From Lepidodermella squamata (Eukaryota; Animalia; Gastrotricha), in the NCBI GenBank assembly GCA_047495785.1, contig JBLDXI010000033.1, positions 1 to 64,000 on the forward strand: a DNA stretch of 64,000 nucleotides, written 5' to 3'. Numbering within the stretch: position 1 is the first letter of the stretch; each line of letters begins with the position of its first letter. This document shows positions 24,262 to 59,600 of the stretch, piece by piece. Position numbers and translations under genes: made by a program. The notes under the pieces are model-generated. The model worked only from the letters and a program-made list of their open reading frames with translations, was not told the origin of the DNA and did no database searches.

Positions 24262-24271
24262 GAAATTCACT

Positions 24272-32256: not shown

Positions 32257-32269
32257 TTATATTGATAAA

Positions 32270-33649: not shown

Positions 33650-33674
33650 AAAGAAAATCTAGTCTTCCAATAAA

Positions 33675-34729: not shown

Positions 34730-34742
34730 TTAGAATGTAAGA

Positions 34743-34874: not shown

Positions 34875-34905
34875 AGCTTTGTTACTGTTATTAGGTAAGT
34901 TGCTA

Positions 34906-37027: not shown

Positions 37028-37039
37028 TTTTATTTTTTA

Positions 37040-37405: not shown

Positions 37406-37489
37406 GTCTATATTAGTAGTCGAGAAATTTATTTTCGCTTTCTTCTCGCCTGAACTTTATTCATCGGCAAAATTTTTAGTGGATATTGA

Positions 37490-37771
37490 TTATTTTCTAA
37501 TTTCAGCCTGTTTTTCTTGTTGCTGATTAGCAGTTAAGAGGCTGCTATAAAGAGACTCGAACTTAATCTTCTCTTTTTCCATGTCTAACAATTTTCGCTC
37601 AATTTCTTTCTCCGATCCTTTTTTCATCTTTTCGAGTTCCCTGTACTGTTTACTTAACGTTTTGTATCCTACGGAAATATCCTTAATTTCTTGTTTACAC
37701 CGCTCTAGGATGCTTTCATAATCTTCCATCATTTCAATCACTTCTGTCAGCGCTACGAATGTATCTGGCAT
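37490..37771 (-). CDS. Coiled-coil protein, paralog B (93 aa, C-terminally shorter)
   Basis: Diverged tandem duplicate with an open frame and its own TATA-like upstream sequence. Confidence 0.65.
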   Translation of the reverse strand: MPDTFVALTEVIEMMEDYESILERCKQEIKDISVGYKTLSKQYRELEKMKKGSEKEIERKLLDMEKEKIKFESLYSSLLTANQQQEKQAEIRK

Positions 37772-37794
37772 GTCTATATAAGTTGTGGAGAAAT

Positions 37795-38091
37795 TTATTT
37801 TCGCTTTCTTCTCGCCTGAACCTCATTCATTGACATAATTTTTACTGGATACTGATTATTCTCTTCCGGGGGTAGTAAATTCACCTTAATATTGCCTCCA
37901 TGCTGATGTTTATAGCCGGAGTTTTCTCTAAATTCTTGATTCGAGCCTAGCCATTTCTGTAAATTATAATATATCATCCCTTTGCTCACGTTGAATTTCG
38001 CCGCAATTTGTAATACAGGAGTTTTGCCTTTAAAATATTCTTCAATAATTTTGGCTTTAGTTTCTGTGCTTATTTGTTTCGTTCTCAACAT
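37795..38091 (-). CDS. Helix-turn-helix DNA-binding protein, 98 aa
   Basis: ISTETKAKII..Y..G..V.QIAAKFNVSKGMIY is a Psq/Tc1-type HTH pattern. Confidence 0.7.
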   Translation of the reverse strand: MLRTKQISTETKAKIIEEYFKGKTPVLQIAAKFNVSKGMIYYNLQKWLGSNQEFRENSGYKHQHGGNIKVNLLPPEENNQYPVKIMSMNEVQARRKRK

Positions 38092-38119
38092 ACTTACCTT
38101 ATATACAGAAATTTTTTTA

Positions 38120-39030
38120 AAGTTTGAAAGTCTGAACGTTTAAACGTTTGAACTTCGCAGGCGTTGGCATGTGCCCTTTTACAAGCATATTTACACGTTT
38201 GAACGGTTGAAAGCTTGAACGTTTGAACGTTTGAAAGCTTGAATGTTTGAACGTTCGAATTATCAGTGTAAATTGTCAGATCAGCATGATATCGGTCGAA
38301 CAGCCCAACTCGGCGATTACAGTTTCGAATCATCGGCCGACTTTGCGGATTAAAATCGCCTGCGGCTAACCTCGATTGCGGCTAAAAATTGTGACCGAAT
38401 TTATTTTTCAAATTTGCCCGGGTTTTATGAATTATCAGCTGATTTTGTGTATAACAGCTAAACTTGAGAAACAAGTTACAAATTTATTATTCTGAAAATT
38501 CCGAAGATGTCGCATACAAATCGCCTGCGGCTAACCTTGGGTTAATTATGACCGAATTTACTTTTCATCGCATTTTTTGGCGTTGACAGAGCAGACATTA
38601 CATCATCTTATAAGCTGCTATTCGCATTCGTAGACATAGATCATATGAATCGGTAGGCTCTGCTGAAACTCCTAGACCTTAGGAAAATTTGGTTGTCAAA
38701 TCTCTCACAACGCTGGACACTGAAAATTGTTGAACCTTCGTTTGAAATCTGAACGTTCAAACGTTCGAACTTCATAGGCGTTGGCATGTACCCTTTTACC
38801 AGCATATTTACACGTTTGAACGGTTGAAAGCTTGAATGTTTGAACGTTCGAATTATCAGTGTAAGTTTGAAGATTAGATCTTTGTCAGATCAGGGTATTT
38901 AGCAAGATATCGGTCGAACAGCCCAACACATTCACGCTTACTGTTTCGAATTCAGTGAATCATCAGCCGTCTTCACGAATGAAAATCGCATGCGGCCAAC
39001 CTTGGGTTTATTGTGACCGAATTTTTAATT
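38120..39030. repeat. Polinton internal non-coding repeats: 8-bp TTTGAACG/AAG microarray and duplicated ~200-bp block
   Basis: ~38130-38335 resembles ~38745-38955; AAATCGCCTGCGGCTAACCT-like motif at ~38354, ~38518, ~38983. Confidence 0.75.
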
Positions 39031-39182
39031 CCTTAATTCTTGGCTTCAGCATAGTCAGTTACATGAAGCGCGAGAGTAACTCTCTGAATGTAATGAACGA
39101 TACAGTCGAGCTAGCCAACGTGACTTTCCGTCCACAAGTGCCGGCTAAACCTCTGCGCGACGAGATTGGAGATCGGACGTAC

Positions 39183-39890
39183 GCCGAAATCGCGATTTCT
39201 GATACCGATTTCGACACGATCAACGCCGAATTTTTACAGTGGCCGTTGATAGTTTGTACAGAATTTCAAGGGCTATCTAATGATATAAAATTTACAGAAC
39301 GGCGATACTGGGTTTCGACTGAAAATTGATTTGTCAGCCAAATTGATTTGTCATCTAGGCCAAAATCGCGATTTCTGAGGCCGATTTCGACCCGATCGTT
39401 GCCGAATTTGTACAGCGGCTGTTGGCAGCTTGTACAGAAGTTCAAGGGCTATCTAATGATATAAAAATTATAGAGTGACGATACTTGATTCGCCTTGAAA
39501 TTGCGATCAAAATCAGTTGATTTAGCATGCCAGCAATGCCAAAAAAGATATTTCTAGAGCCGATTTGTACCATATCGACGCTGAATTTTTACAGCGGCCG
39601 TTGTTAGTTTATATAGAATTTCAAGGGCTATCTAAAGGTATAAAATTCATGGAACGGTGATACTGGTTTCCGGCTAAAATAGCGATCTAAGTCGGTCAAA
39701 TTGGCGTTCCGCCACAGCCAAAATCGTGATTTCCGAAGCCGATTTCGACATAATCGGCGGCGTTCTTGTTCAGCGGGCGCTGTTAGTTTGTACAGAATTT
39801 CAAGGGCTATCTAGTGATATAAAATTTATAGAACGGTGATACTGGGTTCGCCTGGAAATTGCAAGAAAAGTCGGTCAAATTGGTGTGCTA
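39183..39890. repeat. ~179-bp tandem repeat x4 (diverged), Polinton subterminal
   Basis: GAA(T/G)TTCAAGGGCTATCTA at 39261, 39437, 39616, 39795. Confidence 0.88.
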
Positions 39891-40326
39891 AATCTAAACG
39901 CCATTTTTAATTTTTTATTGCCTGATTCCCAGAGATGTTGACTCTGTCTGCTTTGAACTATTGCCTAGCACGCGCTCAAGACTTCGTCAAATTTTTTAAT
40001 TGTTTCCGTTCATTCTCAGGACGGTACTGGATACATTTGAAGATTTACCATTGCGCTCAAAAGTGCAACTTGGGCGTGGACCCGTAGGCTGTAGGTGCTC
40101 ATAGATAAATTCACTGAAGTTTAGTGCTTTCCGACCGAGTGTAGTATCTTTGGAGATTTACCATGAATACGGTGTCCAAATGCATTGAGCTCTATGGTAG
40201 TGCTCTATGGAGCTCCATGGATTCTACGGAAAAAACTCACAGTGAATGCAAGTGCGGTAATTTTTAAGGAGGCTGAAAGCATTCGCTATTATAATTTCAG
40301 CATTTCACATTTCACATTTCACTAAG

Positions 40327-40891
40327 ATGAATAGCTCTCTCTGCGTGTCATTGCTTTTAATAATGGCCATCGCATCAACCATTGCGATCAGCTGCTACGA
40401 TAACCAAAAGGACAGCACATCACCACCCTCGGTTTTTGTTGGATGTCGTGCATGTTATGTAATTTTAGCCATTATTTCAAATCAAACCAAGTCTATAAAT
40501 GAATTTTTTATAGCTTCTAGCCTACAGCGCTCAACGTGGGTCAATGACCTACAACCATTCTTGCATCAGAAATGCAGAAGTACCATGCAATACTCAAACC
40601 TCGGCTGCAGCATATTCCGGAACAGTTACCACGTCCTGTGTATGCTGTAGTGATTGGTGCAATTATAAGGCCTCTCCGTGCTATTTTACCGTAGACTCCC
40701 CTGTTATGCTCTACCTTAATACCAGCGGAGCATGGCAGGGGGCATTCGGCTCTAATACCGCAAATTCATATGACGTATCAACTTCGGCCACCATAATCTC
40801 ATCTACGAAGCGTAATTTCTCCCCTTTACCCTCCTCGAGTCATAATATTCTGATCCTAGGACTTGGTTTGGCCTTCACGTCTGGCCTATAA
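40327..40891 (+). CDS. Ly6/uPAR (three-finger)-like secreted or GPI-anchored protein, 2 exons (40327-40458, 40514-40891), 169 aa
   Basis: Signal peptide, ISCY..C..CY..SC..C..CVCCSDWCN, Ser/Thr-rich stalk, hydrophobic C-terminus; in-frame phase-0 intron; TATA-like at ~40287 and AATAAA at 40962. Confidence 0.8.
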
Positions 40892-41090
40892 AAAAATTCA
40901 GGCCAATGAATACCGCCACATGCCTTATTGAAAAAAAATGTACACTTAAATATTACTTTGAATAAACGAAAAAACGTTTTAAGCCACTGCGGATTTTTTA
41001 ATGTCGCAATGAATAGACATTCTCTGTAAGAAGGTTCAATGAGTTATTTTTGCCTTTCACAATGCCGAGTGCCAAATGATGAAAATCCAT

Positions 41091-41378
41091 TGAGCAGGAC
41101 GTCCTATCCGGAGTAAATTTCATTTCTAGGTGGTGTTCTGAAAACCACCCCTTTTCAGGCTGTTCTCAAAATTTTAAGATCGGAAAATTCGGACGACCGC
41201 TGAAACTCAATTTAATTTGAGCTGGATATGTCTAGGCGGCGATTTTGACTCTTTGGTGATGATTTTTGCATTTCGCATAGCCCATGCGAAAAGCCGAAGA
41301 TTTGCCGCGGAGAATATGATAAAAGATGAAAATTTTATTTTGAGGTGGCTGGCCCAGCTTCGGCCGATTCCTACTGCT
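41091..41378 (-). repeat. Polinton right terminal inverted repeat
   Basis: Reverse complement of 16946-17233. Confidence 0.93.
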
Positions 41379-42529
41379 TTCATGTCATTCAATTGTTACC
41401 CCGATTAATTTTTACAACAAACCTATCGAAACTTCGAAACTTAACTTAAATTATATTATCCAACCTTCATGTTTTGTTATTTGCGTTCTCGTCATCAGTG
41501 TCATCGATTCTCCCAATTCATGTCATTCAGTTGTTACCCCGATTAATTTTTACAACAACCTCTCGAAACTTCGAAACTTTAGCTCAAACCTTCTTGTTTT
41601 GTTCTTTTTGCGTTCTCGTCATCAGTGACATGGATTCTACCAATTCATGTCATTCAATTGTTACCCTGATTGTTTTTTTACAACAAACTCTCGAAACTTC
41701 GAAACTTCAAAACATGGTCGTGGGTTCGAACCAGATTTCTCCTTTTTCTACTCATCAATTTGTTCTTTAACCTTCACGCATTCGTTGTTGGCGTTTTCGT
41801 CATCAGCTACATCGATTCTACCAATTCATGTCATTCAATAGTTCTTTTGTTTGTTTTTCACAACAAAGTCTCACTTCAAAACATGGTCGTGGTTTCGAAT
41901 CCGATCTCTGGTCGTTCCGCTCTCAAATTTTATTCTTCAACCTTCCTGTTTTGTTATGTGCGTACTCGTCATCAGTGACATTGATTCTCCCAATTCATGT
42001 CATTCAGTTGTTACCCCGATTAATTTTTACAACAACCTCTCGAAACTTCGAAACTTTAGCTCAAACCTTCTTGTTTTGTTCTTTTTGCGTTCTCGTCATC
42101 AGTGACATGGATTCTACCAATTCATGTCATTCAATTGTTACCCTGATTGTTTTTTTACAACAAACTCTCGAAACTTCGAAACTTCAAAACATGGTCGTGG
42201 GTTCGAACCAGATCTCTCCTTTTTCTACTCATCAATTTGTTCTTCAACCTGCACGCATTCGTTGTTGGCGTTTTCGTCATCAGCTACATCGATTCTACCA
42301 ATTCATGTCATTCAATTGTTAACTCGATTTTACAACATCTTCTCGAAATTTTATGAAAGCGAATAAATGTTCAACTACTCTTTAACGTGCATTCTTCTCT
42401 AAATATTTCCAAGCCATTCAAAAATACGTTGGACGGTTCCTGAGCGAACCCGAAATTACTACTTATCTATAAACACCTAATCAGGAGAACATTCAAATTT
42501 ACAATTCAATTTCATGTTTCATCAACATT

Positions 42530-43083
42530 GGGGTGAGGGGGAAGCACCGTCCCCTCCAACGACGTGGAGGGGATCTCGTAGGGGTGGTTCGAGTCCGTAC
42601 CCATTACCCAGGAGAGTAGAGAAAAAGAAAGAAAAGGCTAGCGCAGCGTAAGCCTTGTCGAACTCTCCTGGATGGGGGCGCGACTCTGGGAGTTCCGAAG
42701 GAACGCCAGTTCCTTTACGCGTGTTTTACACATACGCCGTAGATTACCACGAACGAAGTGAGATTTCATCCCAACAGGGGGGCCCGAGAACGCGTTGGTT
42801 AACAGGACATACTCCGATCGACTTGCCCGATTTATGGTGGTATCCTGGACCCCTCAGGACCTCCCAGAAACTTTTTCAGCTCAATCGGACCTTCCGTTGA
42901 TTTTCTAGAAATTAGGACGGTTTTTACCTATTTTACCGTATTTTTTAGTCACGTGACCTGGAATGGGTAGTATACGACAGGACAGTAGGAGGATATGATA
43001 GGTACACCAAAAAACAAACCACGCTGACCAAAGCTTCCGAGCCAGCTGACAGGCTGGCCCCTCGCCCCTGGGGGAGAGGGGCC
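42530..43083 (+). other. Junction module, copy 3
   Basis: First half is copy-2 type; the segment after GGGGGCGCG (42682) is copy-1 type; terminal hairpin at 43056-43083. Confidence 0.85.
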
Positions 43084-45749
43084 CCACAATAGCCCGCGAC
43101 AAAAGAGCAAACGACAAAAAGGCAATATAAATAAAAGTCAAGGTCGATTGAAAAAACCTGCGGCAAATTGTTTGTGCATTTTGCACATTAATCTATGGGT
43201 TTACCCGTAATCGACTACGGAGAATCCGAATATGAAATCCATTTTATTATAAAGCAATGATAACCCCATGATAATCCTTCCTAAAGTTTTCTGGCTCGCG
43301 CGGCTGCGTCGCACTCGCTGAAAGAGTTGCGTAACTTTCACCACCTAACGACGCCTCGCTGAGATATGAAACTTCGAACAAGCACAACAAGGTTTTTTCC
43401 AACATGTTCAAGCTGACAGCTAGAGTTTCGCAATACAGGTTAGTCCACAAATACAGAATACTACCTTTGAAAACCAACTTCTTTGCAATCACGGCGACAT
43501 TTCATTTCTTGTGAACGATCAACAGAATCATACTTATTCGTCGTTATTCAGTCGGTATTCAGTTTTCTAACCATATTTTATCTCATCGTTCTGGTCAAAA
43601 TAACCAAATTCGCTCGGAAACCAAGTTTTTCCCACCCAAAATGGTCTTACAACAAGTCGAATATGTTCTTTACAAGGAAATGTTTCACGTCATCAACAAT
43701 TTTTTATGCTATTTACTTCAACCCTGCTTAATTTTTTACAAACATCAATCAAAACTTCCAAGTAAGATTCAACATGAAGTTCAACATTTCGCAAAATACG
43801 TTTCGAAGTACTTCGAAACTTCAACTTAAATTATATTATCCAACCTTCATGTGTTGTTCTTTGCGTTCTCGTCATCAGTGACATCGATTCTACCAATTCA
43901 TGTCATTCAATTGTTACCCTAATTTTTTTTACAACAAACTCTCGAAACTTCAAACTTTCAAAACATGGTCGTAGGTTCCAACCCGATCTCTCCTTTTCTA
44001 CTCTTCAATTTGTTCTTTAACCCTCACGCATTCGTTCTTTACGTTCTCGTCATCAGTGACATCGATTCTACTAATTCATGTCTTTCAATTGTTACCCTGA
44101 TTGTTCTTTACAACAACCTCTCTAGACTTCGAAACTTCAACTTAAATTATATTATCCAACCTTCATGTTTTGTTCTTTGCGTTCTCGTCATCGGTGACAT
44201 AGATTCTCCCAATTCATGTCTCGCAATTGTTACCCCGATTAATTATTACAACAACCTCTCGAAACTTCGAAACTTCAACTCAAACCTTCTTGTGTTCTTC
44301 TTTGCGTTCTACTTCTACCGTACCCTAATTTTGTTACCCTAATTGTTTTTACAACAAACAACAAACTGCAAGTTGGACATTGCAAATTAAACACATTATA
44401 CACATTAAAAAAGTCACATTATACCAAGGAATCCCTGCAAGCTTATACCAATCTGCAATAATTGGTTGAATTAAGATTCATGTGATTCGCTGAAAGAGTT
44501 GCGTAACTTTCACCACCTAAAAACTTAAGACGCCTCGCTGAGATAAGAAACTTCCAACAAGAACTTCACAATAAGGTTTTTTCGAACATGTTCAACCTGA
44601 CAGCGAGTGTGTTGCAATTCAGCTTATTCCACAAATTCACAATCCTCCATTGAAAACCAACTTGACTGAATCACCGCGACGTTTGCTTTGTTGTAAACGA
44701 TGAACAGAATCATACTTATTCGTCGTTATTCAGTCGGTTTTCTATGCGTATTTCATCTCAACGTTATGGTCAATGTGACCAATTTCGTCACCTAACGGTT
44801 TGTTTACTGCTCTCCAGGCCGACAGGAGATCATAAATTGACGATAGATACAAGAGAGCAAACGACAAAAGAGCAAGTCTTATTACTGATAAGTTACTGTC
44901 CAAGGTCCAAGGTCGTGGGTACGAACCCAAGCTCCAAGCTCTCGTTTAACTGCTCTTCATGCTCTCGCTCTCTCAACCTCATGTTGGCGATTTCTTCGTC
45001 ACCGAGTTTAATTCAACTTATTCATGTCATTCAATTGTACTCTGATCAATTCTTTCAACAATGTTCCGAAACTGTGAAACCTCGATAGGCAGCTCGAGGG
45101 TTCGAACCCAAGCTCTCGTTTAACCGCTCCCATGCTTTAGTTCTCAGCGTAGTCGTTATCATCGACATCGATTTAACTTGTGGATGTAATTCCATTGTAC
45201 CCTGCTTAATTTGTTACTCAACTTTTTTTAAAATTTGAAATATCGAAGGAAGGTCATGGGTTCGTACCCAAGCTCATGTGAACCTTCAACATCACTCAAG
45301 CTCTGGTTTAGCTGCTCTCTAATGATATCTGTCATCCTTATACTTTTGGTCTCGGAATTATTTACTAGTGATGGTTAACTAGCGTGGTTAACAGGTAATC
45401 CGAAAACTGTTAAAAAGTACTCAAAATACGTGTAGACGACTCGGTATTAAGACGGTGTGTTCCTCTTTATTTTTATGAAACGGTCGAAGGTTCGAATTCA
45501 ACCTTTCGTTCAACTGCTTTGCGATGATTTCGTTCATTCCCAAGCTCTCATTCTCGGCATTAACGTCATTACCGACATCGATTTAGTTTGCACTTGTCAT
45601 TCAGTCGAACCCCGCTAAATTTTGCTCTCCAAGGAATTCTTTCATCCGTATGCTCTAGTTCTCGGCTTTTTGGTCAACACCGACATCGAATTGCCTTTTG
45701 CCTTGTACATGGTAATCAATTGTACTCTGCTTACTTATTTATAAGAATT

Positions 45750-45956
45750 TGTAAGGAGCGGAGTGAAAACAAGAAGCTATTTGCCAAGTATTGCCTTTAT
45801 TAATAACGAGAATATTTAATAATACAAACTGAATCAATACAGAAACAAAGATGTTTATATATGTCCATGGAATAATCTGGAACATAGAAGGTTCCAGAAC
45901 AGGAAAGTTCCAGAGCATGGAAGGTTCCAGAACATAGAATGTTCTAGATCCTCACA
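45750..45956 (-). mobile_element. Solo LTR (207 bp) containing a heat-shock-element array
   Basis: TG...CA ends, 5-bp TSD GAATT (45745-45749, 45957-45961); on the minus strand TATATAAA (45861-45854) then AATAAA (45801-45796). Confidence 0.85.
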
Positions 45957-48401
45957 GAATTGTCTAAAAATTTGAAATCTCTGAGTTTGAACCCTCGCTC
46001 TCGTTAAACTGCTCTCCAACGAATTCTTTCATCTGTATGCTCTCCTTCACTGCGTTATCCTCACCGGGAACATGGATTCAACTAATCCCAGTCATTCAAT
46101 TGTACTTTGCTCAATGTTTTCAAAGAATTTTGTGAACAATTGAAATTTCAAAGTAACATCAAGGGTTCGAACCCAAGGTCACGTTAAACTGCTCTCCTAT
46201 GATTTCTGTCACCCTCGTGGTCTCGTTCTCGGCGTTTTCGTCATCCACGACATCGATTTGACTGTTATGGTCAAAGTAACCAAATTCGTTCGCAAACCAA
46301 GCATCACCGTTGTAAATATTAGCTGAAAATATTTCAGTTCGAACGTGTAGACGACGAACATCCCATATCTTGCGTCACACGCCGCGTTCACACGCGCATG
46401 ATTGAGGTTGGAACATTTCTTCTGCCACTTTGAGGTCTTCGACTTTAAAATGATAACCCTACCAGCAATCCGTGCTAACGATTCCGTCAGCCGGGAAAAG
46501 TTCATCTTTTTCGGACCTTCATCAGCAGGAACGATTACGTCTCATAAAAAACTAGTTGTTCCCTTCCACGGTCCCGTATATTTCGCGTTGCAGAGATTGT
46601 GGATGTTCCCCAGCCAAAATTGAGCTTTAAAGTACAAGTTCCAAACTGCCGTATCGCGCGGGATAATCACTGCAAAGGTTTACCTGCCATTCTCGTTATC
46701 ACTTCTAAATAAAGTAAAACAGTCTCGTATCAGTTTCGTTGATTTTCGATTTTCACTACATTTAAGGGAAATATATAGTTGGTGCTTGACGTACCGAAAA
46801 ATGAGTGTGTAGTCTGATTCAATGTTAGGGTTCGTGTTGTTCGCTTTTAGAGCGGCGTCCTTTTCAAGCTTCACTTTCCGCCCCGTTCACTTTCAAAGGA
46901 AGGTCGAGGGTTCGAACCCAAGCTGTCGTTGAACTGCTCTCTAATGATTTCTGTCAACATGTTCTCGCTGTTGGCGATATTTCGTCATCGACTTCAATTC
47001 AACTTCAATTCAATCCTTGTCATTCAATTGTAACCTCAACAATTTGTTTTTCTAGAAATGACCGAAACTTCGGATAGTCGTTGGTTCGAACCCAAACCCT
47101 CGTTCAACTGCTCAGCAACGATTTCTTTCATCCGTATGCTCTCAATCTTGGCGTTAACGTCGTTACCGAAATCGATTTACCTTGTACATGTTATTCAATC
47201 GCACCCTGCTTGAATTATTATGACAATTTTTTGAAAATTTGAAAGTTAAAAGGTCGAGGTTTCGAACCCAAGCTTTTGTTGAACTGCTTTGTGATGATTT
47301 CGTTCACCTTCATGCAGCCAGAAGCTCTTGACGTCTAAATGCTGTCGTTTTCGGCGTCAACGTCATTACCGAGATCGATTTAGTTTGTACATATCATTCA
47401 ATCGCTCCCTCCTTCAATTTTTATAACAATTTTCTGAAAATTTGGAATTTTAAAGGAACGGCAAGGGTTCGAACCCAAGCTGACGTTCAGCCGCTCTCCA
47501 AGGAATTCTTGCATCCGTATGCTCTCGTTCTCGGCGTTTTCGTCATCAGCAACATCGATTCAACTTATCCTTGTCATTCAATTGTATCCTGATCAATTAT
47601 TTTTAATTTGTTTACCAAAATTTGAAATTCAAAAAGAAGACCGATTGTTTGTTACAACAACCTCTCGAAACTTCGAAACTTCAGCTCAAACCTTCTTTTT
47701 TGTTCTTTTTGCGTTCTCGTCATCAGTGAGATCGATTCTACCAATTCATGTCATTCAATTGTTACCCCGATTAATTTTTACAACAACCTCTCGAAACTTT
47801 GAAACTTCAGCTCAAACCTTCTTGTTTCGTTCTTTCCGTTCTCTTCATCAGTGAGATCGATTCTCCCAATTCATGTCATTCAATTGTTACCCCGATTAAT
47901 TGTTACAACAACCTCTCAAAACTTCGAATCTTCAAAACATGGTCGTGGGTTCGAACCCGATCTCTCTTTTTTCTACTATTCAAACTGTTCTTTAACCTTA
48001 ACGCATTCGTTCTTGGCGTTTTGGTCATCAGCTACATCGATTCTACTAATCCATGTCATTCAATTGTTAACCTGATTTTACAACTTTGAAATTTTACATC
48101 TTCTCGAAATAACAATACATTAACAATAATAGGAATTTACAATCAGCTACATCGATTCTACTAATCCATGTCACTCAATTGTTAACCCGATTTTACAACA
48201 TCTTCTCGAAACTTTGAAATTTTATGAAAGCGAATAAATGTTCAACTACTCTTTAACGTGCATTCTTCTCAAAATATTTTCCTAGCCATTCAATAATACG
48301 TTGGAAGGTTCCTGAGCGAACCCGAAATTACTGCTTATCTATCAAGACCTAATCCGAAGAACATTCTAATTTACAATTAAATTTCAAATGTCATCAGCAT
48401 T

Positions 48402-48976
48402 GGGGTGAGGGGGAAGCACCGTCCCCTCCAACGACGTGGAGGGGATCTCCAAGGGGTGGTTCGAGTCCTTACCCATTACCCAGGAGAGTAGAGAAAAGAA
48501 AGAAAAGGCTAGCGCAGCGTTAGCCTTGTGGAACTCTCCTGGATGGGGGCGCGCGACAGATGGCCGAAGGCCATCCTCCTAGGGACCGAAGGTCCCCCAC
48601 ACCTATCAATACTGCGCTATTAACAACCGACAACAGGAGGGGTAGTGTACAAAAATTGGCCCGTTTGACCGAGTTGACTAGCAAGGAAAACTCCGATTGG
48701 GTTGATTTTTTTTTTGTAGGATCCCTAACCCTTTGGGACCTCCCACAACTCTTTTCAGAATGATCGGAGCTTCCGACTATTTTTGGCGAATTATGCTAAT
48801 TTTGCTCTATGAGCAACTCATTTGCATATGCAAATTAGCTTGGAGGTAGTATACCATAGGGCAGTAGGAGGATACGATGTGTACTCCGAAAAACGAAGCA
48901 TGCTTTGCTAATCTTCTGAGACTTTCTACAGAAGCCAGCCACCGAGCTGGCCCCTCGCCCCTGGGGGAGAGGGGCC
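48402..48976 (+). other. Junction module, copy 4 (upstream of the RepHel gene)
   Basis: Identical to copy 1 up to GGGGGCGCG (48553), then diverged but homologous; hairpin at 48949-48976. Confidence 0.85.
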
Positions 48977-51900
48977 GACAAAAAATATGTGATCTCTTGG
49001 CCTGTTCTGTTGGCTTGCCCCGCCCGAAAACGCCTCGCACTCTTAAAAAGCCCAATCTTGCCACAACCATTTGGCGTTTCACAGGCGGAGAGGATGTTGT
49101 TTCTGATGTTGTTGTTCGTCTTGTCAAGTTCATACTTGCGGTCGCCGTCCCAGTTGTCGACGCAGAACTGGGTATGAACGGATCTGAATCGCTAACGGTG
49201 TTGCGAGGTCGTGTTAACAATCCGCTAACAATGCAGCTGAGAAATTCCGGTAAGATAATGGTTTCATCTACGTCTCACCATTATGGAATAAATATATCTA
49301 GTTGCTGGAGTCTGCGTTTCAGTTGATGGCAATGAGCAGCTGCTGTCTGGCTACGTGTCAACAAAGGAGCTCCTACTTTGTCAAGTCGGGGCCGGTAGCC
49401 TGATCAAATGGCACAATCTTCCCAGTGACATTCGAGGCATTCATCATCTTGTCCTTGTTGTCGTGGAACACGGTCACAAAATCTACGTCTTATCCCGCTG
49501 GTCCGGGACCTTTTCCGGCTGGTGGACGATTAAGCCGAACGGTCAAGTTCTTCGGGACGTCGCTGATTACTTCAAGCGGTCAGTTCTTCGCTTTGCGCTA
49601 TATGCCAAGTCAGGTGATCAACAATTCTGGAACGAAGCGGTTCGCGAATCGCTAGGTGGGCAAAGCAAGGCTGCTTGCGCCGATCACTTCCAGGAGGATA
49701 GCTTTAAATTCAGCCTCATCAAGGTCCCGGCAAAGCACAAGGTCAAGTGCTGCAATCGCTTACTGAGTGGCATTCAATGTGGCAAGGTTGCTTACTGGCG
49801 ATGTCCACATGGCTTGGATAACAATAACTTGAGCTGCACAGTTGGGGTTTGTCCTCAGTGCTGGAAACGGTTGCCGTCCGATGTGGTCACCAAGATCGAT
49901 CAACCTGGTTTTCTGCCAGTAATCCCCGAACAGGAGGAGGCGGAGTCTGACTCAACCAGTTCAGCTTCATCACGGCGAGAAAGCTTCGGTGAATTGCCAT
50001 TTATTGAAGGAGATGGTGCATCTTCATCTTCATCTGAATCGGATCGCGGCGATCTCTTTCCGCAAGCTGATGCGGTTCCAATGTATGACCCAACCAAAGG
50101 TATTCTGGCCAAGTACCTCTGGGATCATTTGAGCATCTTGCACCGTAACAAGCTCAAACGCGACTCCGCCCAGAGGTCTTTCTTGCTGCAGCAGCTGGTT
50201 TCTACTGGCGATGCGCCTGCAGCATCGATACTTTATCCCGAAGGCGCACTCTTTCCGTCGCTTTGCTTTGCGCAGAGAGAGGGCAGCGTGATTGGGGCCA
50301 TCCCTTTCCACCACTACAGTTCTGCTGTCTCAAATCATCCCGGTGGCATCGCGTCGCTCTCGGCTCACGCGAAAATTCGCCTTCGCAACATTTTCCTAGC
50401 TTCCAGCTGGTCTTTTGGAGCTATTTCCTTCTACCATGATGTTGCGGTCATGGTAAAGCTCAACTGCAATAGCACCACCAGCTTCTTGCGTTACGGAAGC
50501 GAGGCCTTCGTCGACAAGGGCGCTTTGGCGTATTCACAGCAAGGGTCTGCCCTCGAATACGATGAATTCGACTCCATGGGTAAGCTGAAAGAGATCAGTG
50601 TCATGGTGAAGCACGAGCCCTGGAATCTTTTCGGGACCGTCACTTGTAGTGATACAGGTATATAGTAGTTTTATTATTCGCAGGATAAATTATTCATAGA
50701 GCCTTAAGCCAATTTCACTGTTCTTCTATGGTTAAGGAAAGTTACGATATCTCAATACGTTGGGAACTAAATGACTCAGGCTTATATTTTCCTGTGATTA
50801 ACGTTGCATTCTCTCTATAATTTCCACTTAATTTGTTTCTAGGAACGCCCGGTGTTTGCCAGATAATTAAGGCGCTCATGATCAACGCTCAGCTACATCA
50901 GGGTCCTGAACCCGTCTTGAACAAGGCAGATTATAAGCGGTCGCCTTGGCAAATGTTGCAGCTGCAACAATCACTTGATCCGGTGAAGTACAAGCGCCTT
51001 TACAATGCATATTCTGTCTTCATCAACATGGCATGGCAGCGAACCCAGCATCACCTCATTGAGCTACTGAAGCGTACCAACCTGGTCGGTAACATCTCAA
51101 CCATATTTGTTCGGAACGAATTTCAAAGCGAGGACGCAATCGGGAACAAGAGCCATCTGCATATGGGCATTCATGTCACGGATGCTCCCGATACTATCAT
51201 CAGCAAGATTTGTTGCGATCCCTGTGAGTTCTTCTCTGAGCAGTATGGCACCGACTATGAGTCGCTCAGGCGCCTGGGTTTCGTGCAGACTTTTGACCAC
51301 TTCCTGCTAATGCAGGAGTACCATCGACCGCTTATTCGCCACTCATGCGAAAGTGCCAGGTTCAAATGCATGGTTCCTCGCGGTGAAAACGGCGAGATGA
51401 TTTGCCGCGTTCGGAAGCACGGTGTATCCTCCGTTGATTACTTCGAGCCGAAGAAGAACCTGTATTCCGAGGAAACTTGCGATGAGTTCGAGACCTTGGG
51501 CCTAGCACGTCGTGTTGCTACAAACGACCCCAACGGGCCTGACACTGAGTGGGACATTCTGCCGGATGCTCTCCGAGCTGGAGCGTATCATTACGCTATA
51601 AAACACCTTGAGAAGGACGTAACGTTCCTGCCGAGTATTCCCATCGTTTCCGTAATGATGGGTTCTTCAACAAACTGGCAACGATGCGACAACCGGTTCA
51701 GTGCTTCATATCTCACCAGCTACTCTGTCGGCTCTGAACCACGTGGTTACGTGTTTTTTGCGGGAACCGATGTGCCTGGTCAGGTTGTTGCTCAATTCCC
51801 AGCTGGCATCGAGAGGAACCAAAAGCTGCCTAGTGTTCGGTAACACATATTTTTTCATTTTAGAGTTCTTGTACAAGTAATTCGTTAAATTTAGTAAACT

Positions 51901-54900
51901 GATGGAGAAACAGTTGAAGCAAGTAAGTCAGGATGTCAAGCAACGCTGCCTTTTCATTGCGTTCACTGAAGTTATATGGTTTACGCTCGGTTACCCTTAC
52001 ACACTTTGTAATGTGTCATTCGTTCACGTCAACACGCACCCACCAGCTATGCGCTTCATGTACTGGCGACAAAATGCCCAAACTCCCGGTCGCTTGCAAC
52101 CCGGCTCAGATGAAAGTGTGTTTGACCCAAATCGGAAGCGGAGAAATCTACCCTTGTGGCGACAGCACAGTGCTATGTCCATCTTTTTGGCATCGCATGT
52201 TCGAGGCTCGACGTTGAGTCCTGGAAAGATGGAGAGATTCGATATTCGATTCCCGGAGGGGCGGATTTTCACCAGCATTGCGCTGTTTTTCTCAATCTTC
52301 GTCGCAGCTACAGGGTACCGCAGGCCGTATGATCCTGAAAGGGACACGATGATTCGGTTCTTCGATCCGCTCGGAAAAGAGTACCTCATTTGGGATTGTT
52401 CGTTGCATCTCGCCATGCAATTTCTCGAACAGCAGGACCCTGCTGATCCTGCCGTGCAAGCCCTAATGAACATTTTCGAGAACCTCATCGAAGGCAATCC
52501 TGCTTATACCGCCTTGTGAGTTTCACCACATTAAGTACTTGCAACGATTTGCTATAACCTTTTCATTTCCTCCCATGTAAGGTACTTGAAAGTTTCTAAC
52601 CAAGCCGCGGTTTTGCCAGTGTTATCGTCAACAACTCCCAATCATCGCTTTTTCTTCCTGTATCATGTCGTACTCTCTTTGGGAAAAATTGATAGCGAAG
52701 CTCAGATCTTCCAGGCTGGTCACCTCCGTGAAGCTTTCGTCCGAGCTCAGCTGATTCGTGTGGACCCAGTGACTAACGAGCCGACTCACCTGGAACAGGA
52801 TGTCAATGCGATGAAAAGGCGAATTATCTTGGAACAGTTTGCTTGGTTACCGGTGCCGGTCAAGAAATTCGAATTTCACGTACGCCAGCTGAGAGACTTG
52901 TTTCACGAGTTCTTCTTTGGCGATGGTGGAACCGACGACTTCTCGCCGGTTACTGATCGTACAGCAATCCAGTACGAGATGGACGAGGACATTCGCCTAG
53001 CCGAAGATGACATCAAGTCGACGCTATTGAAATCGCTGTATTCGCAGCTGGAGAACAAGCTTCCATTGCCGCCGATAGTTGACCTTCAGCGATCAACGCA
53101 GGCCGAGCCCATCGACTGGCAACCTCAGCTTCAGCGTCAACCTGGCCAAACCGACGAATCCTTGGCAGAGCAGGCAAAAACGCTTACCTATGGCCTTGAA
53201 AGCCTCGATAGGTTTCAGAAAAACGTGTCACCAACAAACCATTTAGCTTTGGTGGGGCCTCCTGGTGCAGGAAAAACAACCCTGGCTCAAATCCTTGCTC
53301 TGGCAGCTATCGGTCGAGGCCTAACCGTCGCTCTAACTGCCCTGACTTCAGAAAGGGCTAGATCGCTAGGTGGACGTCATCTCAATCTCATGTTTCCACT
53401 GCCAGTTACTGAGTCACCTTACAGATCGAGTCTTGCTTATACTGACTACTGTCTTCGCGGTTTGGCTTCGAAAACGAAATTGTCAGTACTTCTGTACAGA
53501 ACAGATGTCATCATTCTCGAAGAAATTGGTCTGGTTTCGTCTGAAACGCTCGAGGTCATCGACCTTGTCATGAGAACCCTGACAGGTTTGTTAATTTCAT
53601 TATAAGTTCTGAAAGTACCTCTCCAACCTATTCTAGGATTGAATGCGAAAATGGGCGGTAAATTGATAATCGCCACCGGTGACTACAGCCAGCTCAAGTG
53701 TATTGATGGCCGGTCGTTTTGGGAGTCAACGCAGCTATACTTGTGCTATGACGTTGCACTACTGAAGCATTTTGTTCGAGCCGCACAGGATCAACTGCTA
53801 CAGCAAGCCCTAAATGTTCTGCGCCAATCAGTATTGGATGAAGCGGATCGCCGCCTGGTCGTTGAGGCAGTCAGCGCCTGCTGCAAGTTCTATAATGACT
53901 GGTCGGATGTGCCTTTTGATGTGCAGCGTCTCGTGCCTACTCGCAGAGCCGAACAAGAAGTCATACACAATTTTCTGGCTGCATCGGAGCGCAGCGGCAA
54001 GGTCATGCTGTCAGCTGATGCTCGGGACGAAGTTCAACGTCAAGGCATATGGGTGGCTACGCTTCGTGGCGATCACAAAAACTACCTTGATCGACTAACG
54101 CTGAAGCCGCAAAAACTCACGCTTTTTGTTGGGGCAGTCGTCTGCATGACGTACAACTTCAATGCTTCGACACCCGCCAGTTCCTTCTCACAAGGTCAAC
54201 TTGCAATTGTTGAAAAACTGCCCGCGGATCTGAATGCAGATGGTGCGAAAATCGTTCTCAAGCTTGTTCCGCCTGGTAGTCGCGACATTGAACATAGCTC
54301 TGGTTGGACAACAATCACAGTTGGTCGCCATGACGAAGACAATGTCGTTTTCGGCGAAACGAAGCAGCATCTTAGGCGTGTTCAATTTGGCATTCGCCAC
54401 TATATCGCGTCGACCATCCACCGCATTATGGGTTCAACGTGTGAAAACGGTGTAGCTGTCAAGATTTCTCATGCAGAAAAAGGTTACATCCTTTGGGAAC
54501 GGGCTCAGCTGACAGTTATACTGTCGAGATGTCGGTCGCTTGAAATGGTGGCGTTTGTCGGCTCCGAGGACGAGGTTCTTTTGGCTATTAATCAATTGCT
54601 CATCCTGCAGGACGAGGAATATGCTCGAATCGTTCGAAACCTGCTTAGAATCAATGTCCTTCGGGATGGCTTTGTCCGCGGATCGCGGATTGTTTGGCAT
54701 CGAGCACGCCCGGAAGCTTTCGCGCCGCCAAGCCAAGAAAATATCAACTACGCTACTTTTCCGTGAGTCACTCTATCTGTTTCCATTTTCAGCTTCAAGT
54801 ATAACATTACTTAGCATCAACCTCTTGTCAACGCAGCCGGCAACTGCTAACCCTCAGCTTGCTCCTCTTCCTGGGACATCAACCCCATCTACCAGCCGAC

Positions 54901-56320
54901 GACCTCTGAATCCCGGTGCGATTTTACCAGCGGCGCCTCGTGTGGTTACAGGTCTATTTCAACCAATCGGTCCCGCCCATTTTGAGGATGAACCATTTGG
55001 ATTTGTGTACCATATCGTTTCGCTCAGCCGACCTTGGCACAGCTATTACGGAGAAACCACGTATTCCCCGATCAAACGCTTGTCTGAACACAATAACAGT
55101 ATGATGTTAATGTAAGTTATATCTCTCTTCATTATCCGTCTTTTAATTAGATGCGGGGGCTGTCATGACTCGTGGCGACCAGTGGCTGCTCTACGCAGTC
55201 GTCTCCCAGCTGTCAAGTCGGCGAGAGCGGATGTATCTCGAGGCAGAAATGCATCGAATACTTCGCCGGTATCCCCGAATTTTGCCATGGCAATTGCGAG
55301 CGCGACTATTCAACGTCGTGGCCAACTGGCAAATGTACAACCGGAGTGCCGCAGTTGTCATCCACATGAGTGACCTCAATGAAGGCGAAGTTCGGCGACG
55401 CCTTACAGCTCGAGCAGCGTTAAGGAATGGTGATCTGCCAGGTTTGTGCCGAAAGCTATTTATATCTTTTATCACTGAATTTACTGTTTACGTTTGTTAA
55501 CCCAAATGAAGAGAGCGATTTCCTTGATGGCATTAATCGCCCGGTTGGTTGCGTTACAACCGGGGATCCAAACGCGCCAGGTGAATTTATTAACTGTCAA
55601 ATTATTTGCTAATTTTTTATTTGTAAACAGCTGATTGTCCGCCAGAACTTTTCCAAATGCCACTTACCCTCGCGGATGTCTTGTCGCTGCAACCGGCGCC
55701 CATTCCGCGGCAACGCCAACCTCAGCCGCTAATTCTACCAGTGCAGGAAGACAGGTGCCACTGTGGCGAGGAGATTTTCGGAGCGTGCTGCTGCGCTTAC
55801 CATCAGGCGCACTTTCCGGAGCTGCTATGCCACGACCACTTCATGGCCAGCCAGTGCAGCGCTCCGCAGGAGGAAAACACGCAAGCATAAATCTTCCAAA
55901 CAAGTCGCTACTAATGGTGTCATCATTAGGGCCCGGTATCGCCCCTATCCGGGGTCACAAGTACCTCGCGTATTTGTTGACCACCACCGAGTAGACACAC
56001 CACGGTGCATGTCTATGAAGGGAGGGGCCCTTTCTTCAAAAACACACAAATGCCGGTATTAAAGGTATTGATTGATTCATTTATTTTTACTTACACATTT
56101 TACTTACAAGGACTTACACATCTATATTCATTCTCTGTTTAAACTTTTTCGGGGTGAGGGGGATTCACATCCCCTCCAATGACCTGGAGGGGATCACTCA
56201 TAGGGGTGGTTCGAGTTATTACGCCGTGCGCAGCACCCAGAAGAATAGAGAAAGAAATACACGAAAAGGCTCCGCGCAGCGGACATCCTCTCGTCGCATC
56301 GTTCTGGATGAGTGGCGCCG
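48554..56320 (+). mobile_element. Candidate autonomous Helitron-like rolling-circle element (exact ends inferred)
   Basis: RepHel-GIY-YIG gene bracketed by junction modules 4 and 5 in direct orientation; no TSD seen. Confidence 0.7.
48877..55890 (+). CDS. Helitron-like RepHel: Zn finger + HUH(Y2) Rep + Pif1/SF1B helicase + GIY-YIG endonuclease + Cys/His tail; 10 exons, ~2126 aa (start uncertain)
   Basis: Exons 48877-49249, 49302-50657, 50843-51839, 51895-52515, 52582-53585, 53637-54762, 54815-55098, 55151-55441, 55512-55580, 55631-55890 splice into one open frame. Rep: PWNLFGTVT, RNEFQ..GNKSHLH, YLTSY. Helicase: GPPGAGKTT, LEEIG, GDYSQL, RVQF..STIH..G, QLTVILSR. GIY-YIG: GFVYHI..YYGET..RLSEHN..W.L..LE. 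Confidence 0.88.
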
Positions 56321-56691
56321 AAAAAAAAACATTTGCCGGAGGCAACAATAAAAAATTCCAAACCCGCCTTTACCTTTTCGACATAACGTAGTAAAACACC
56401 CCCCTTGAACAGCATCTAAGCAACTGTAAGGCCCACGTCCTCGAGCTTGGTGTCATTCGATAGCCCGTCATTTCAATATGCCAGCAAACCTTTTTCAGCC
56501 AGTTCGGGTGATTTTCCTATTTTTGGTGAATTTTTGAATAATTTATCGAAGTTGTTGCTGTTGTCGATCGATTGGAAAAAATCGATAATCGATAACAAAT
56601 TATAGGAGGATAGAGGTGGGCGCTTAAAAAATGAGGCTTGAGAAAAATAACGTTGCCTAACGCTGCCCTCCCCCATGCGGTGGGGGAGGGC
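56151..56691 (+). other. Junction module, copy 5 (strongly diverged, structure conserved)
   Basis: GGGGTGAGGGGG, CCCCTCCA/TGGAGGGG, AGGGGTGGTTCGAGT, CCAGAA/TTCTGG, TCCGC-GCA-GCGGA, TTGCC-GGA-GGCAA, TAGGAGGATA and an 11-bp GC hairpin at 56665-56691. Confidence 0.8.
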
Positions 56692-59600
56692 TTCAAAGCT
56701 CTAATGCTTTTGATGACGCCATCGGGTCGGCAAACTTATTCAACCAAAAGCTATTAGCCAGCTTCAGCGATCGCAGTGTCTCAAGACGCGACCGTCTACA
56801 ACAGGGCACATGTTAAGAGTGCCAAGATTGTTCTTGGGCGCTGATAGCTCTGCACGGCTCAATAATGTAGGTATACATTGTTCATTCAAAAAACTGTCCA
56901 TGTTCTGAAGTTTTCAATGTACAAAGGAGACTCAATACACGTGTCCCAAGCTGCAGCTTCTCCAATTAAAAAATACCCGTGCACCCTCAAAACGACTGCT
57001 ATTCCACTTCATTCACCATAGCGTAATTTTTTCAGGTCAGCAGGACGTGCGCAGTTTAGGAAAGGCCCCCAACTTTGTTAATTGAAAAATTGCGGAAATC
57101 CAAGCGCGAGGTAGTCAGAGCTCTTATTTACCCCTCAAACTGCCTATAAGTGGGCCGTACTTGTCACTTTCCCGCGGTACTATGAGAATAGCTTTTCCTG
57201 ACTTTTCCTCTCATTTGTGTGCTCGCTTGTCAAAAAATCGTCAAGTTCGTTATAAAGCATCTGATGTGACATCATCGCCTAGAAGCAAAATGGACGACTG
57301 ACGAATTCGTCTAAACGTGCTTTTTTACTAAATGTGACGTTAAAATAATAATGCAATAAGGCCATCCTTTAGTTATGAATAGCAACGCGTTCAGTTTTGA
57401 GGTTTGAAATCCGCGGAACGTGCAGAGCTGTCTCATTGTCATGCAAACGCATGCTAAGGGTGAAATGAGGTTTTGCTTCGCCGCATGCTTCGCCGCATGC
57501 TTCATCAAAAATAAGCTATTAGGGCAAAGCTCTAAATGGCTAAGAACCACATAATTACAAGCTCCCTTTGTCGGATTTAAGTCATTTCCCAAAGCCGTAC
57601 ACTATTTCAAGCGATAAGAAACACTACCAGTGGGTTATATCAGAAGAAATGTCGGAATTAGGGTCAGTTTCAGCGGAAAATTCGACTTCAGAACAGCTCT
57701 ACGATGATTATGATTTTTTGGCGGCAAGGCGCTTGAGAACATTTTCGACTTTGAATGAAACGGAATTACCGTATTTCTCGAATATTTACCACTGCTATAT
57801 TATTTATGAGTGAATGATTTTTTATTCGGGTTGTATAAATGAGTGGGATATAGTATACGGATGTACTATAATTGCGAATAATCACTAAAAGCCGTGAGCA
57901 ATTCATATCAAGACGACGCGTTTGGATTATTTTATTTGTCGATTCATTGAAAAAGGGAAAAAGTTAAGTTTTGCCTACAAACAAAAACAATCATCATTGC
58001 AATCATTGCGATAGCGATTGCGATAATCAGTGATTAGGGTCATGCGTTATTATTTAGGCATTCAATTTTTTTCAACGCGTGCATCGCTAGAATTAAAGTA
58101 GCTGTGTGTCAATTTCGAGGCTAGGGTTAATTATGAACTAATGATTTTTTCGTCGGGTTGTCTTAGGTAGCGGGGATACATCGTTAACAGCGGCCAAAAC
58201 AACCACAAAGATGACTCATTCAATCGTACTTCTAGCCACATAGCGTAATGGTGAAGTACGTTAGGCTTTTTGAGCACCGATTTTTTCATCTATCGAACGA
58301 ACTTTCCTCATAAAATCTGTAAAAAGTAAAGTGGTTGTTTTGGCGCGTCGCAAACGATATACTTTCTAGAAATACGGTATTTACTATTTCGATACCACCA
58401 GCTCGGAAACCAGCGGCAACGTTGCTAGCACAAAATTGAGTGAGGCCACTAAAGAGGTGTTTCAATAAGCTGCTTCAGGAAGACCGGAACATTTTTCAGA
58501 TCTGTCAAGCCCCTGAATCTATTGCGCCGCATTACCGCTCCCCAGCCCTCTTTAGATGGAACATGATAGATCAATTAAATGGAGCATGTCCGTTAAGACA
58601 GGTGGAAATCGAATTAGCTCGCTCGGTGTTTTGCTCCACAACTTACTCACAAACCTCATACGTCAGGTGAGATCCGTGACCATCCCAAAGGACAAAACCC
58701 TCATCCTTGACTTAATACTTGGAGACTTGGGGGTTTTGACCCGGACCCCGGACCCAGGTCGGTGAAGCTGCGGGGACTCGAAAAAGTCGACGTTTTCTAT
58801 GCAGATTTAGGCTGCGATAAAGGTTAAGATGTGAAACTATCCATCCTCTAATGTTGTCAAAATCGCGGTGCAAAGGTCAACATCTGCAAAGTAAACAAAA
58901 ACGCGTGCCTAGACCAAAGAATTTAATAAGGTCATTTTTCTCTCATTTCTACGAAAATTGTCTCGTCCAAAATGAATGAAAATGATACGCCTGTAATTTT
59001 TGCTGGCTTTCAAATGAATCAAAGCTCATCGCGCACCAAAATAGAGAAGACGCGCTATTGCTAGACAAAAGCGGTCGGAAACTTTTGAAATTGAAATTGT
59101 TTGACATTTGCCGGGACGGTAAATTTCAAAATTAGAAAAATTATAAATAAATTTAGGTGCGCCTAATTCGCCAGCAGAGTTCCAAATGTTCTCACTATCT
59201 AACTGGCCTAAGCTCCGATATTTCTCCTGATTTTTTTCAGTTTTGGCATCATAGGTTTCCCAAAACCGTGTCCATAGGACTCGTGCGAACCTTCAGGTTT
59301 CCCACGGGCTTCAAAATGACAAAATGACAAAAATAGATCCCCACTAAGAAACGAGGCATTTTTGGACCATTTTCATACCCAAAATTGAAAGAAAATTGTC
59401 AGTTTCGCTCGCGAGTGGCCTACTTACGAAGACGTTTAATGACAGCCTCACTGATTAAAGGACGGTAATGTATACAATTAATTTTTTAAAACTGATCCAT
59501 GACTTATGTCTCCTGCTATTTATTCAATCCACCTTTATTTTGGTTTGTGTTTTGTGAATAAAACATTTTTTTTTTTAATAAAAATTCGACTAAAGACATT

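What the first reader, a model, noticed from the sequence alone, without database searches (positions are those of the whole stretch)
48877..55890. Intact, highly divergent Helitron-like RepHel with a fused GIY-YIG endonuclease
Seen: ten ORF fragments splice through nine GT-AG introns into one stop-free ~2,126-aa frame: Zn finger, HUH/Y2 Rep, Pif1-type helicase, SLX1-like GIY-YIG and a Cys/His tail. Motifs deviate from canonical Helitrons: EFQSEDAIGNKSHLH vs EFQxRGxxHxH, EE vs DE in Walker B, TIHRIMG vs TIHKSQG, QLTVILSR vs QxYVALSR. Established: Helentrons append an APE endonuclease to RepHel. Inference: this is a separate lineage using GIY-YIG as the accessory target-nicking or flap-resolving nuclease, and it may be recently active. 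The native N-terminus may be missing, because the frame starts inside junction module 4.
Basis: partly seen in the sequence, partly recalled or inferred. Interest (0 to 1): 0.85.

Follow-up and report, generated by a model that had tools for sequence, protein, structure and literature searches.

The report
Front-deleted Helitron-like transposase with SLX1-type nuclease
This is a real, stop-free gene of a rolling-circle jumping element from a widespread branch that I found described in none of the papers searched; its enzyme ends in an extra branched-DNA-cutting domain, but this copy has lost the conserved front fifth of the protein and probably cannot move on its own.

Summary
In detail: nine GT-AG introns give a stop-free 2,126-aa frame. 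Exons 2-8 are colinear with about 120 relatives, many intronless, from an ostracod, a tunicate, hagfish and metagenomes. The Rep domain matches only Helraiser in the PDB (profile E 4e-8; structure Z 10.5). The helicase is Pif1-like. The tail is an SLX1-type GIY-YIG domain with its catalytic residues, present in 52 of 52 C-terminally complete relatives (partly circular count). In Rep and helicase trees the group stands apart from HLE1 and HLE2 (SH-aLRT 100). The odd motifs are shared across the lineage, not decay.

'Intact' is wrong. A conserved ~400-aa Cys/His-rich N-terminal domain, found in 51 of 52 long relatives, is absent from the whole window, and the first ~69 codons look non-coding. 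The element spans ~48545-56309 in a head-to-tail array of ORF-less relatives joined at CTGGAT. No RNA run was available; the Cys/His tail is unique to this copy and unproven. The scan has already reported this lineage on many other pieces of this genome. Verdict: new variant of a known kind, defective copy.

The parts
48545..56309 (+). Element unit (about 7.77 kb) between two CTGGAT junctions; the true ends may lie up to 6 nt further left
   Evidence: junction bracketed table 7
48545..48985 (+). 5' terminal module shared with ORF-less neighbours: C-GAA-G mini-hairpin, then a GC-rich hairpin at about 48949-48976
48877..49083 (+).
   Evidence: codon score 0.004 against 0.18 for in-frame coding; overlaps the terminal module; no homologue
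49085..49249 (+). Coding-like remnant of an internal exon behind a TTTCACAG acceptor; likely the first surviving piece of the gene
   Evidence: codon score 0.21; inference
49302..50657 (+). Exon 2: C/H zinc-finger-like cluster, acidic linker, conserved pre-Rep region, Rep motif 1 (FGTVTC)
   Evidence: profile E 6e-63 to relatives
50843..51839 (+). Exon 3: HUH Rep nuclease; HxH motif 51118-51162, two catalytic-type Tyr at 51709-51723
51895..52515 (+). Exon 4: conserved Rep-helicase linker
52582..53585 (+). Exon 5: helicase N-half, Walker A 53255-53278 and Walker B (EE type)
53637..54762 (+). Exon 6: Pif1-type SF1B helicase motifs III-VI (motif VI 54506-54529)
54815..55098 (+). Exon 7: Pro-rich linker and first half of the SLX1-type GIY-YIG domain (from 54999)
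   Evidence: profile of relatives' tails E 3e-9
55151..55441 (+). Exon 8: second half of the GIY-YIG domain with the metal-binding Glu, then helices
   Evidence: profile E 2e-4; Glu in register with SLX1
55512..55580 (+). Exon 9 (uncertain, weak acceptor)
   Evidence: coding-like codon use; no homologue
55631..55890 (+). Exon 10: Cys/His-rich tail private to this copy; stop codon
56149..56309 (+). 3' terminal module: 10-bp hairpin (56169-56194) and a long stem closing just before the junction
48400..48544 (+).
42674..48544 (+). Upstream ORF-less, satellite-filled unit with related termini
11480..13948 (+). ORF-less unit of the same array
13949..42673 (+). ORF-less unit of the same array, interrupted by a Polinton/Maverick (16946-41378)
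56310..56700 (+). 5' terminal module of the next, more divergent unit

Best explanation
This is an N-terminally deleted copy of a Helitron-like rolling-circle transposon from a deep lineage, separate from HLE1 and HLE2, whose single transposase is [Cys/His N-domain]-[Zn finger]-HUH/Y2 Rep-Pif1 helicase-SLX1-type GIY-YIG. Likely working cycle of the full-length element: (1) the Rep binds a terminus as single-stranded DNA and nicks it through a phosphotyrosine link (established for Helraiser, inferred here from conserved HxH, two Tyr and the shared fold); (2) the helicase peels off one strand until the hairpin/stem module ends the round and the second Tyr closes a circle (inferred); (3) the strand is joined at or beside a CTGGAT motif, which each unit carries at its end, so copies stack head to tail (pattern shown, targeting inferred); (4) the GIY-YIG domain cuts the branched joint or flap left by strand transfer, as SLX1 does on flaps and junctions (inferred from kinship; about 50%, with target nicking about 30% and dispensable about 20%). 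This copy keeps both termini and all catalytic residues but lacks the conserved ~400-aa front domain, so it is most likely non-autonomous and movable only in trans.
For: Colinear homology exon by exon to 122 representatives. Rep profile hits only Helraiser in the PDB, E 4e-8, with HUH and Y2 aligned; the AlphaFold model of exon 3 (pLDDT 88) gives Helraiser Z 10.5, next hit 4.3. 44 of 51 aligned Rep segments hit Helitron_like_N. Helicase profile hits Pif1 proteins. Tail profile hits SLX1 best, E 7e-12; 20 of 33 tails hit Pfam GIY-YIG on their own. The group has SH-aLRT 100 in both trees. The N-block is in 51 of 52 proteins with at least 700 aa before Rep, starts about 960 aa and ends about 570 aa before it, and has no hit in six frames of the window; the window frame has 576 aa. 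Two apparent exceptions carry the block in the upstream frame. In Helraiser, loss of the N-terminal 489 aa abolishes ssDNA binding (PMC4778049). Five CTGGAT junctions in the window; one contig shows unrelated DNA running into the same CTGGAT and 5' module (table 7). Listed differences to related copies: 11 synonymous, 7 nonsynonymous, 8 intronic.
Against: No RNA evidence for expression or splicing. No biochemical evidence for any step. The missing block has no detectable homology to Helraiser's N-terminus or to any fold, so its necessity is inferred from conservation only. The Rep half lies in one unbranched 4.5-kb contig, so no near-identical full-length parent is visible in the run. The nearest relative (Cyprideis, a broken copy) also shows no block in 13 kb upstream, which leaves room for a naturally shorter sub-lineage. 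Trees rest on 22-28 lineage rows and 15-22 canonical rows chosen by motif; branching among the three groups is unresolved.
Confidence: 0.72

Rival explanations
1. The copy is an autonomous, naturally shortened member of a sub-lineage that has dispensed with the N-terminal block, or receives it from a separate gene, and starts at an internal Met (for example 49174 or 49231) or an unseen 5' exon.
For: 6.4 kb of frame with no stop or frameshift and all catalytic residues kept. The frame begins close to where the block ends in relatives. The sister sequence from Cyprideis also lacks a block hit. No near-identical parent in the run.
Against: The block is in 51 of 52 long relatives and in the two frameshifted loci checked. 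The Cyprideis copy is visibly broken (frameshift, internal duplication, truncated GIY-YIG). The 5' junction is single-copy, so this form has not spread.
Confidence: 0.17
2. The group is only a fast-evolving HLE2 (Helitron2/Helentron) subgroup, or the same clade as the Paramecium Helitrons, and GIY-YIG is captured cargo with no role in transposition.
For: One Rep tree joins it to HLE2 with support 72. Some members carry OTU as HLE2 do. Hairpins at both ends and satellite-filled ORF-less derivatives resemble Helentron derivatives. HELIANO reports a GIY-YIG captured by one Sphagnum HLE2 family (PMC11417382). A third, very divergent clade is published for Paramecium (PMC13085455).
Against: No DUF6570 (the HLE2 marker) and no AP endonuclease in the members scanned, while four of six HLE2 references carry DUF6570. 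HLE2 rows group without it (support 88) and its stem is long in both trees. No T|T junction. GIY-YIG is in frame and at the same position in every complete member, which is unlike cargo. The Paramecium paper never mentions GIY-YIG.
Confidence: 0.15
3. The gene is a domesticated, immobile host gene or a chance stitching of ORF fragments.
For: It has host-type small introns and a single-copy 5' half.
Against: It is flanked by termini shared with four ORF-less units. Related copies with frameshifts and internal deletions exist in the run. Intronless relatives validate the junctions.
Confidence: 0.04

Closest known systems
Helitron / HLE1 (Helraiser, PDB 7LCC)
   Same: One Rep-helicase protein; HxH and Y-x3-Y; same Rep fold (Z 10.5, 190 residues, rmsd 4.2); Pif1-type helicase; sub-terminal hairpin; no target duplication seen
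   Different: EFQ-x4-6-GN-x-(P/S)HxH instead of EFQxRGLPHxH; mostly EE Walker B; unrelated N-terminal domain; fused GIY-YIG; no 5'-TC; ~440-nt and ~160-nt structured terminal modules; separate clade in both trees
HLE2 (Helentron, Helitron2)
   Same: Long transposase (2,200-2,800 aa) with an accessory nuclease after the helicase; OTU in some members; hairpins at both ends; satellite-filled non-autonomous derivatives
   Different: GIY-YIG instead of AP endonuclease; no DUF6570; junctions at CTGGAT, not T|T; outside the sampled HLE2 clade
HelenSM92 (Sphagnum HLE2 with captured GIY-YIG, PMC11417382)
   Same: GIY-YIG inside a Helitron-like element
Paramecium third Helitron clade (PMC13085455)
   Same: Very divergent clade outside HLE1/HLE2, long ORFs, satellites between termini, ORF-less derivatives, apparent target specificity
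   Different: Targets telomeric repeats, ends in CCAA, 9-10 kb ORFs, no GIY-YIG mentioned; relationship untested
SLX1 / At-HIGLE / UPF0213 GIY-YIG nucleases
   Same: Best structural-sequence matches of the tail; Y..YxG..R..HN..W..E pattern in register
   Different: No RING domain or SLX4 partner seen; fused to a transposase

Membership tests
Helitron-like elements (RepHel superfamily) | HUH Rep with two catalytic Tyr upstream of the helicase in one ORF | tested here: met
Helitron-like elements (RepHel superfamily) | Pif1-type SF1B helicase with Walker A/B and arginine finger | tested here: met
Helitron-like elements (RepHel superfamily) | No target-site duplication, hairpin near the 3' end | tested here: inconclusive
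   Hairpin present; all junctions are element-element and share CTGGAT, so a short duplication cannot be excluded
Helitron-like elements (RepHel superfamily) | Rolling-circle transposition through a circular intermediate | not testable with these tools
   needs experiment
HLE1 (canonical Helitron) | Transposase inside the HLE1 clade | tested here: not met
HLE1 (canonical Helitron) | 5'-TC ... CTRR-3' ends, A|T insertion | tested here: inconclusive
   A CTGG closes the 3' stem, but no TC follows; the exact cut lies somewhere in CTGGAT
HLE2 (Helentron/Helitron2) | DUF6570 upstream of Rep | tested here: not met
   absent in window exon 2 and four relatives; present in four of six HLE2 references
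HLE2 (Helentron/Helitron2) | Transposase inside the HLE2 clade | tested here: not met
   outside the sampled HLE2 in the Rep tree and separate in the helicase tree; a sister position is not rejected
HLE2 (Helentron/Helitron2) | T|T insertion and short asymmetric inverted repeats | tested here: not met
   no TT at any of five junctions
Helentron | AP endonuclease after the helicase | tested here: not met
   GIY-YIG instead
Paramecium third clade | Transposase inside that clade | not testable with these tools
   no sequences held
SLX1-type GIY-YIG nuclease | Two Tyr motifs, Arg, His-Asn and metal-binding Glu in register | tested here: met
SLX1-type GIY-YIG nuclease | C-terminal RING domain | tested here: not met
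   relatives end without a Cys cluster; the window tail matches no family
SLX1-type GIY-YIG nuclease | Cleaves flaps and Holliday junctions | not testable with these tools
   needs assay
Full-length member of this GIY-YIG lineage | Conserved ~400-aa Cys/His N-terminal block | tested here: not met

The most novel reading that the evidence does not exclude
The lineage is a distinct superfamily-level group of eukaryotic rolling-circle transposons in which an SLX1-like structure-specific nuclease is an obligatory part of integration, a front domain of unrecognised fold binds the structured termini, and elements insert sequence-specifically at a short motif that they recreate at their own end, building head-to-tail arrays.
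Probability: 0.35. Interest if true: 0.78.

Novelty: new variant of a known kind. Interest (0 to 1): 0.55.

Why it matters
Published classification recognises HLE1, HLE2 and a Paramecium clade. This branch occurs in crustaceans, tunicates, hagfish and many metagenomes, yet single members score zero on the standard Rep model (the window exon hits no Helitron Pfam family), so annotation tools will tend to miss it. How Helitron-type elements finish integration, and why Helentrons carry a second nuclease, is open. A lineage with a different, universally kept, well-understood nuclease at the same position makes that question testable by one active-site mutant. A short target motif would also be unusual for this class. 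This particular copy is a poor reagent because it lacks the front domain; intronless full-length relatives (for example P0009, P0134) are better.

Tried and rejected
Word-based protein search with the Rep exon found nothing, nor did single-sequence PDB searches, ESM Atlas by features or Foldseek on the Rep model; the full-library HMMER search and VIA-align succeeded. The missing N-block folds confidently (pLDDT 87) but matches nothing: Pfam, PDB sequence, PDB structure best Z 3.3, Atlas TM 0.31 or less; this does not prove a new fold. Viral contigs held no canonical Helitron motif. The window's terminal modules are not detectable in relatives' loci. A G-rich stretch near 59997-60065 resembles a decayed 3' module by eye but was not significant. 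The GTAAGT donor at 55112 was rejected as out of frame. I mislabelled reference L098 as HLE2; it falls in HLE1. One DNA pattern was mistyped and found only one junction; one search replaced it. Supplements of the two key papers are not held. As the operators required, the spliced protein was assembled only inside a script to count codons, check stops and score variants; every search, alignment, fold and tree used single exons by reference, and the joined search was left out.
Full report
Observation. Nine GT-AG introns join ten exons into 2,126 stop-free codons from 48877 to 55890, and all quoted motifs are present. The only public run that holds the stretch behaves as DNA: a 4,468-nt contig covers about 48947-53414 and shows no differences over the part laid (from 50400), introns included. 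Splicing is therefore supported by homology, not by RNA. The joined protein was built only in a script to check the frame; all searches were done exon by exon.

What the protein is. Alone, the window exons give only weak P-loop hits. A full-library search with the Rep exon returned 122 representatives at 24-44% identity, many 2,200-2,800 aa long. Exons 2-7 map to them in order and cover positions about 570-2209 of a 2,304-position profile, in close register across introns 3 and 5; intron 2 restores the TxTCxxxxTPGV spacing exactly. Named relatives are from Cyprideis torosa (nearest in both trees), Styela clava and Myxine glutinosa; the rest are unnamed metagenome proteins. The Rep alignment keeps H681/H683 and the first Tyr invariant and the second Tyr in over 90%, hits Helitron_like_N in 44 of 51 rows, and has Helraiser as its only significant PDB match. 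The predicted structure of the window's exon 3 matches Helraiser at Z 10.5, with other HUH Reps at about 4. The helicase half matches Pif1 proteins.

GIY-YIG. Tails of 33 relatives give a profile whose best solved matches are SLX1 (E 7e-12), At-HIGLE and UPF0213 proteins; 20 of 33 hit Pfam GIY-YIG singly. Window exon 7 matches the first half (E 3e-9) and exon 8 the second half (E 2e-4), and no other exon scores. The Tyr, Arg, His-Asn and Glu positions are kept; the Glu aligns with SLX1 Glu79, whose mutation abolishes activity (PMC4407285). All 52 C-terminally complete proteins in hand carry the core; 33 of them built the profile and several are close kin, so this count is not fully independent. 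Relatives stop about 90 aa after the core, with no RING. Exons 9-10 have coding-like codon use but no homologue, and intron 8 has a weak acceptor, so the Cys/His tail is private and unproven.

Position among Helitrons. Canonical references were fetched by motif from metagenomes and HLE2 identity was checked by DUF6570. In a Rep tree rooted on prokaryotic Reps the window and its relatives form a clade with SH-aLRT 100 on a long stem, beside HLE1 (97) and HLE2 (88). The helicase tree separates the group likewise. Whether it is sister to HLE2 or to HLE1+HLE2 is unresolved. Sampling was by similarity on one side and by motif on the other, so intermediate forms could have been missed.

The copy is not intact. 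Relatives share a Cys/His-rich block of about 400 aa that begins about 960 aa and ends about 570 aa before the Rep exon. It is present in 51 of 52 proteins long enough to hold it, and in the upstream frame of two loci where the called protein lacked it. It has no hit in any frame of the 64-kb window. The window frame has 576 aa before the Rep exon, of which the first 69 codons lie partly in the non-coding terminal module and score as non-coding, while 49085-49249 scores as coding and follows a plausible acceptor. The simplest reading is a deletion that joined the 5' terminus to the inside of the gene. The block folds well but matches no known structure. In Helraiser, removing the N-terminal 489 aa abolishes ssDNA binding (PMC4778049); the analogy is functional, not by homology. 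Against a very recent deletion from a resident parent, the contig runs unbranched across the junction and the whole Rep half. Related copies exist mainly for the 3' half, mostly 90-99% alike, some with frameshifts or deletions; among the 26 best-supported differences in the gene, 11 are synonymous, 7 nonsynonymous and 8 intronic. That is a small, selected sample, but it points to past purifying selection.

Element ends. A composite module occurs five times, at about 11480, 13950, 42675, 48545 and 56310. Its left half (10-bp hairpin plus a long stem with three pairs changed on both sides among three variants) goes with the upstream unit, and its right half (C-GNA-G mini-hairpin, later a GC-rich hairpin) goes with the downstream unit. 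The switch falls at an invariant CTGGAT. One contig in the run has unrelated DNA running directly into CTGGAT and the 5' module of the unit at 56310 (table 7). So CTGGAT is either a target that the element recreates at its 3' end or the first six bases of the element; I could not separate these. The motif was a lead from note s1-421988. The neighbours are ORF-less, satellite-filled units, one holding a Polinton. In an unrelated metagenome locus a decayed N-block begins about 130 nt after the stop codon of an intact-looking relative (L005), which fits tandem stacking elsewhere too.

Mechanism. Shown: domain content, catalytic residues, termini, tandem arrangement, loss of the front domain. Established for Helraiser and inferred here: nicking by HUH/Y2, unwinding, hairpin-guided termination, circle formation. 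Inferred only: the GIY-YIG domain trims the branched joint after strand transfer (about 50%), nicks the target (about 30%) or is dispensable (about 20%). This copy is most likely movable only in trans (about 75%).

Literature and earlier notes. Searches of the held library found no description of this lineage. The nearest mentions are a GIY-YIG captured by one Sphagnum HLE2 family (PMC11417382) and a third Helitron clade in Paramecium with no mention of GIY-YIG (PMC13085455). Repbase and subscription journals could not be searched. The scan's own notes report the same architecture on many other pieces of this genome; these are unchecked and were not used as support.

Verdict. It works like a Helitron and belongs to the RepHel superfamily, but fails the membership tests for HLE1 and HLE2. 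New variant of a known kind; this copy is defective. Interest 0.55.

Noticed in passing
window 16946-41378: Polinton/Maverick with 300-nt inverted ends (92%) and a 6-bp target duplication TTCATG, inserted into a satellite of an ORF-less array unit; integrase with chromo and PLA2-like domains, A32 ATPase, and a 1,412-aa ORF with an endonuclease VII hit. Described only.
   Followed up: partly
window 25628-29607: Perfect (100%) nested duplications of 322, 783 and 889 nt spacing inside the Polinton, giving three copies of a 169-aa ORF; could be a recent expansion or an assembly artefact.
   Followed up: no
window 10251-11488 and 47316-48553: 1,238 nt identical: the array starts with only the 3' part of a unit, with no 5' module before it. 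Together with more relatives for the 3' half of the gene in the run, this may mean that copies are often lost or cut from the 5' side.
   Followed up: partly
window 60233-62659: 5'-truncated LINE-type ORF (end of AP endonuclease plus reverse transcriptase), stop-free for 808 aa.
   Followed up: partly
window 6498-7000: tRNA-Glu and tRNA-Pro on the minus strand, with further tRNA-like remnants nearby.
   Followed up: no
L005 16757-16855: Decayed start of a second transposase about 130 nt after the stop of the first, suggesting head-to-tail stacking in another organism.
   Followed up: partly
P0009:28-427 (alignment A4): The lineage's N-terminal Cys/His-rich block folds at pLDDT 87 and matches nothing in Pfam, PDB or the ESM Atlas; possibly an undescribed DNA-binding fold. 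Sub-domains were not searched separately.
   Followed up: partly
run X1 against window 53385 and about 49995-50020: A contig joins 53385 to what looks like the reverse complement of about 50000-50020, and another skips 54494-55645: rearranged and internally deleted relatives exist in the genome.
   Followed up: no
window 59997-60065: G-rich stretch that resembles a decayed 3' terminal module just before the LINE; not significant by profile search.
   Followed up: yes
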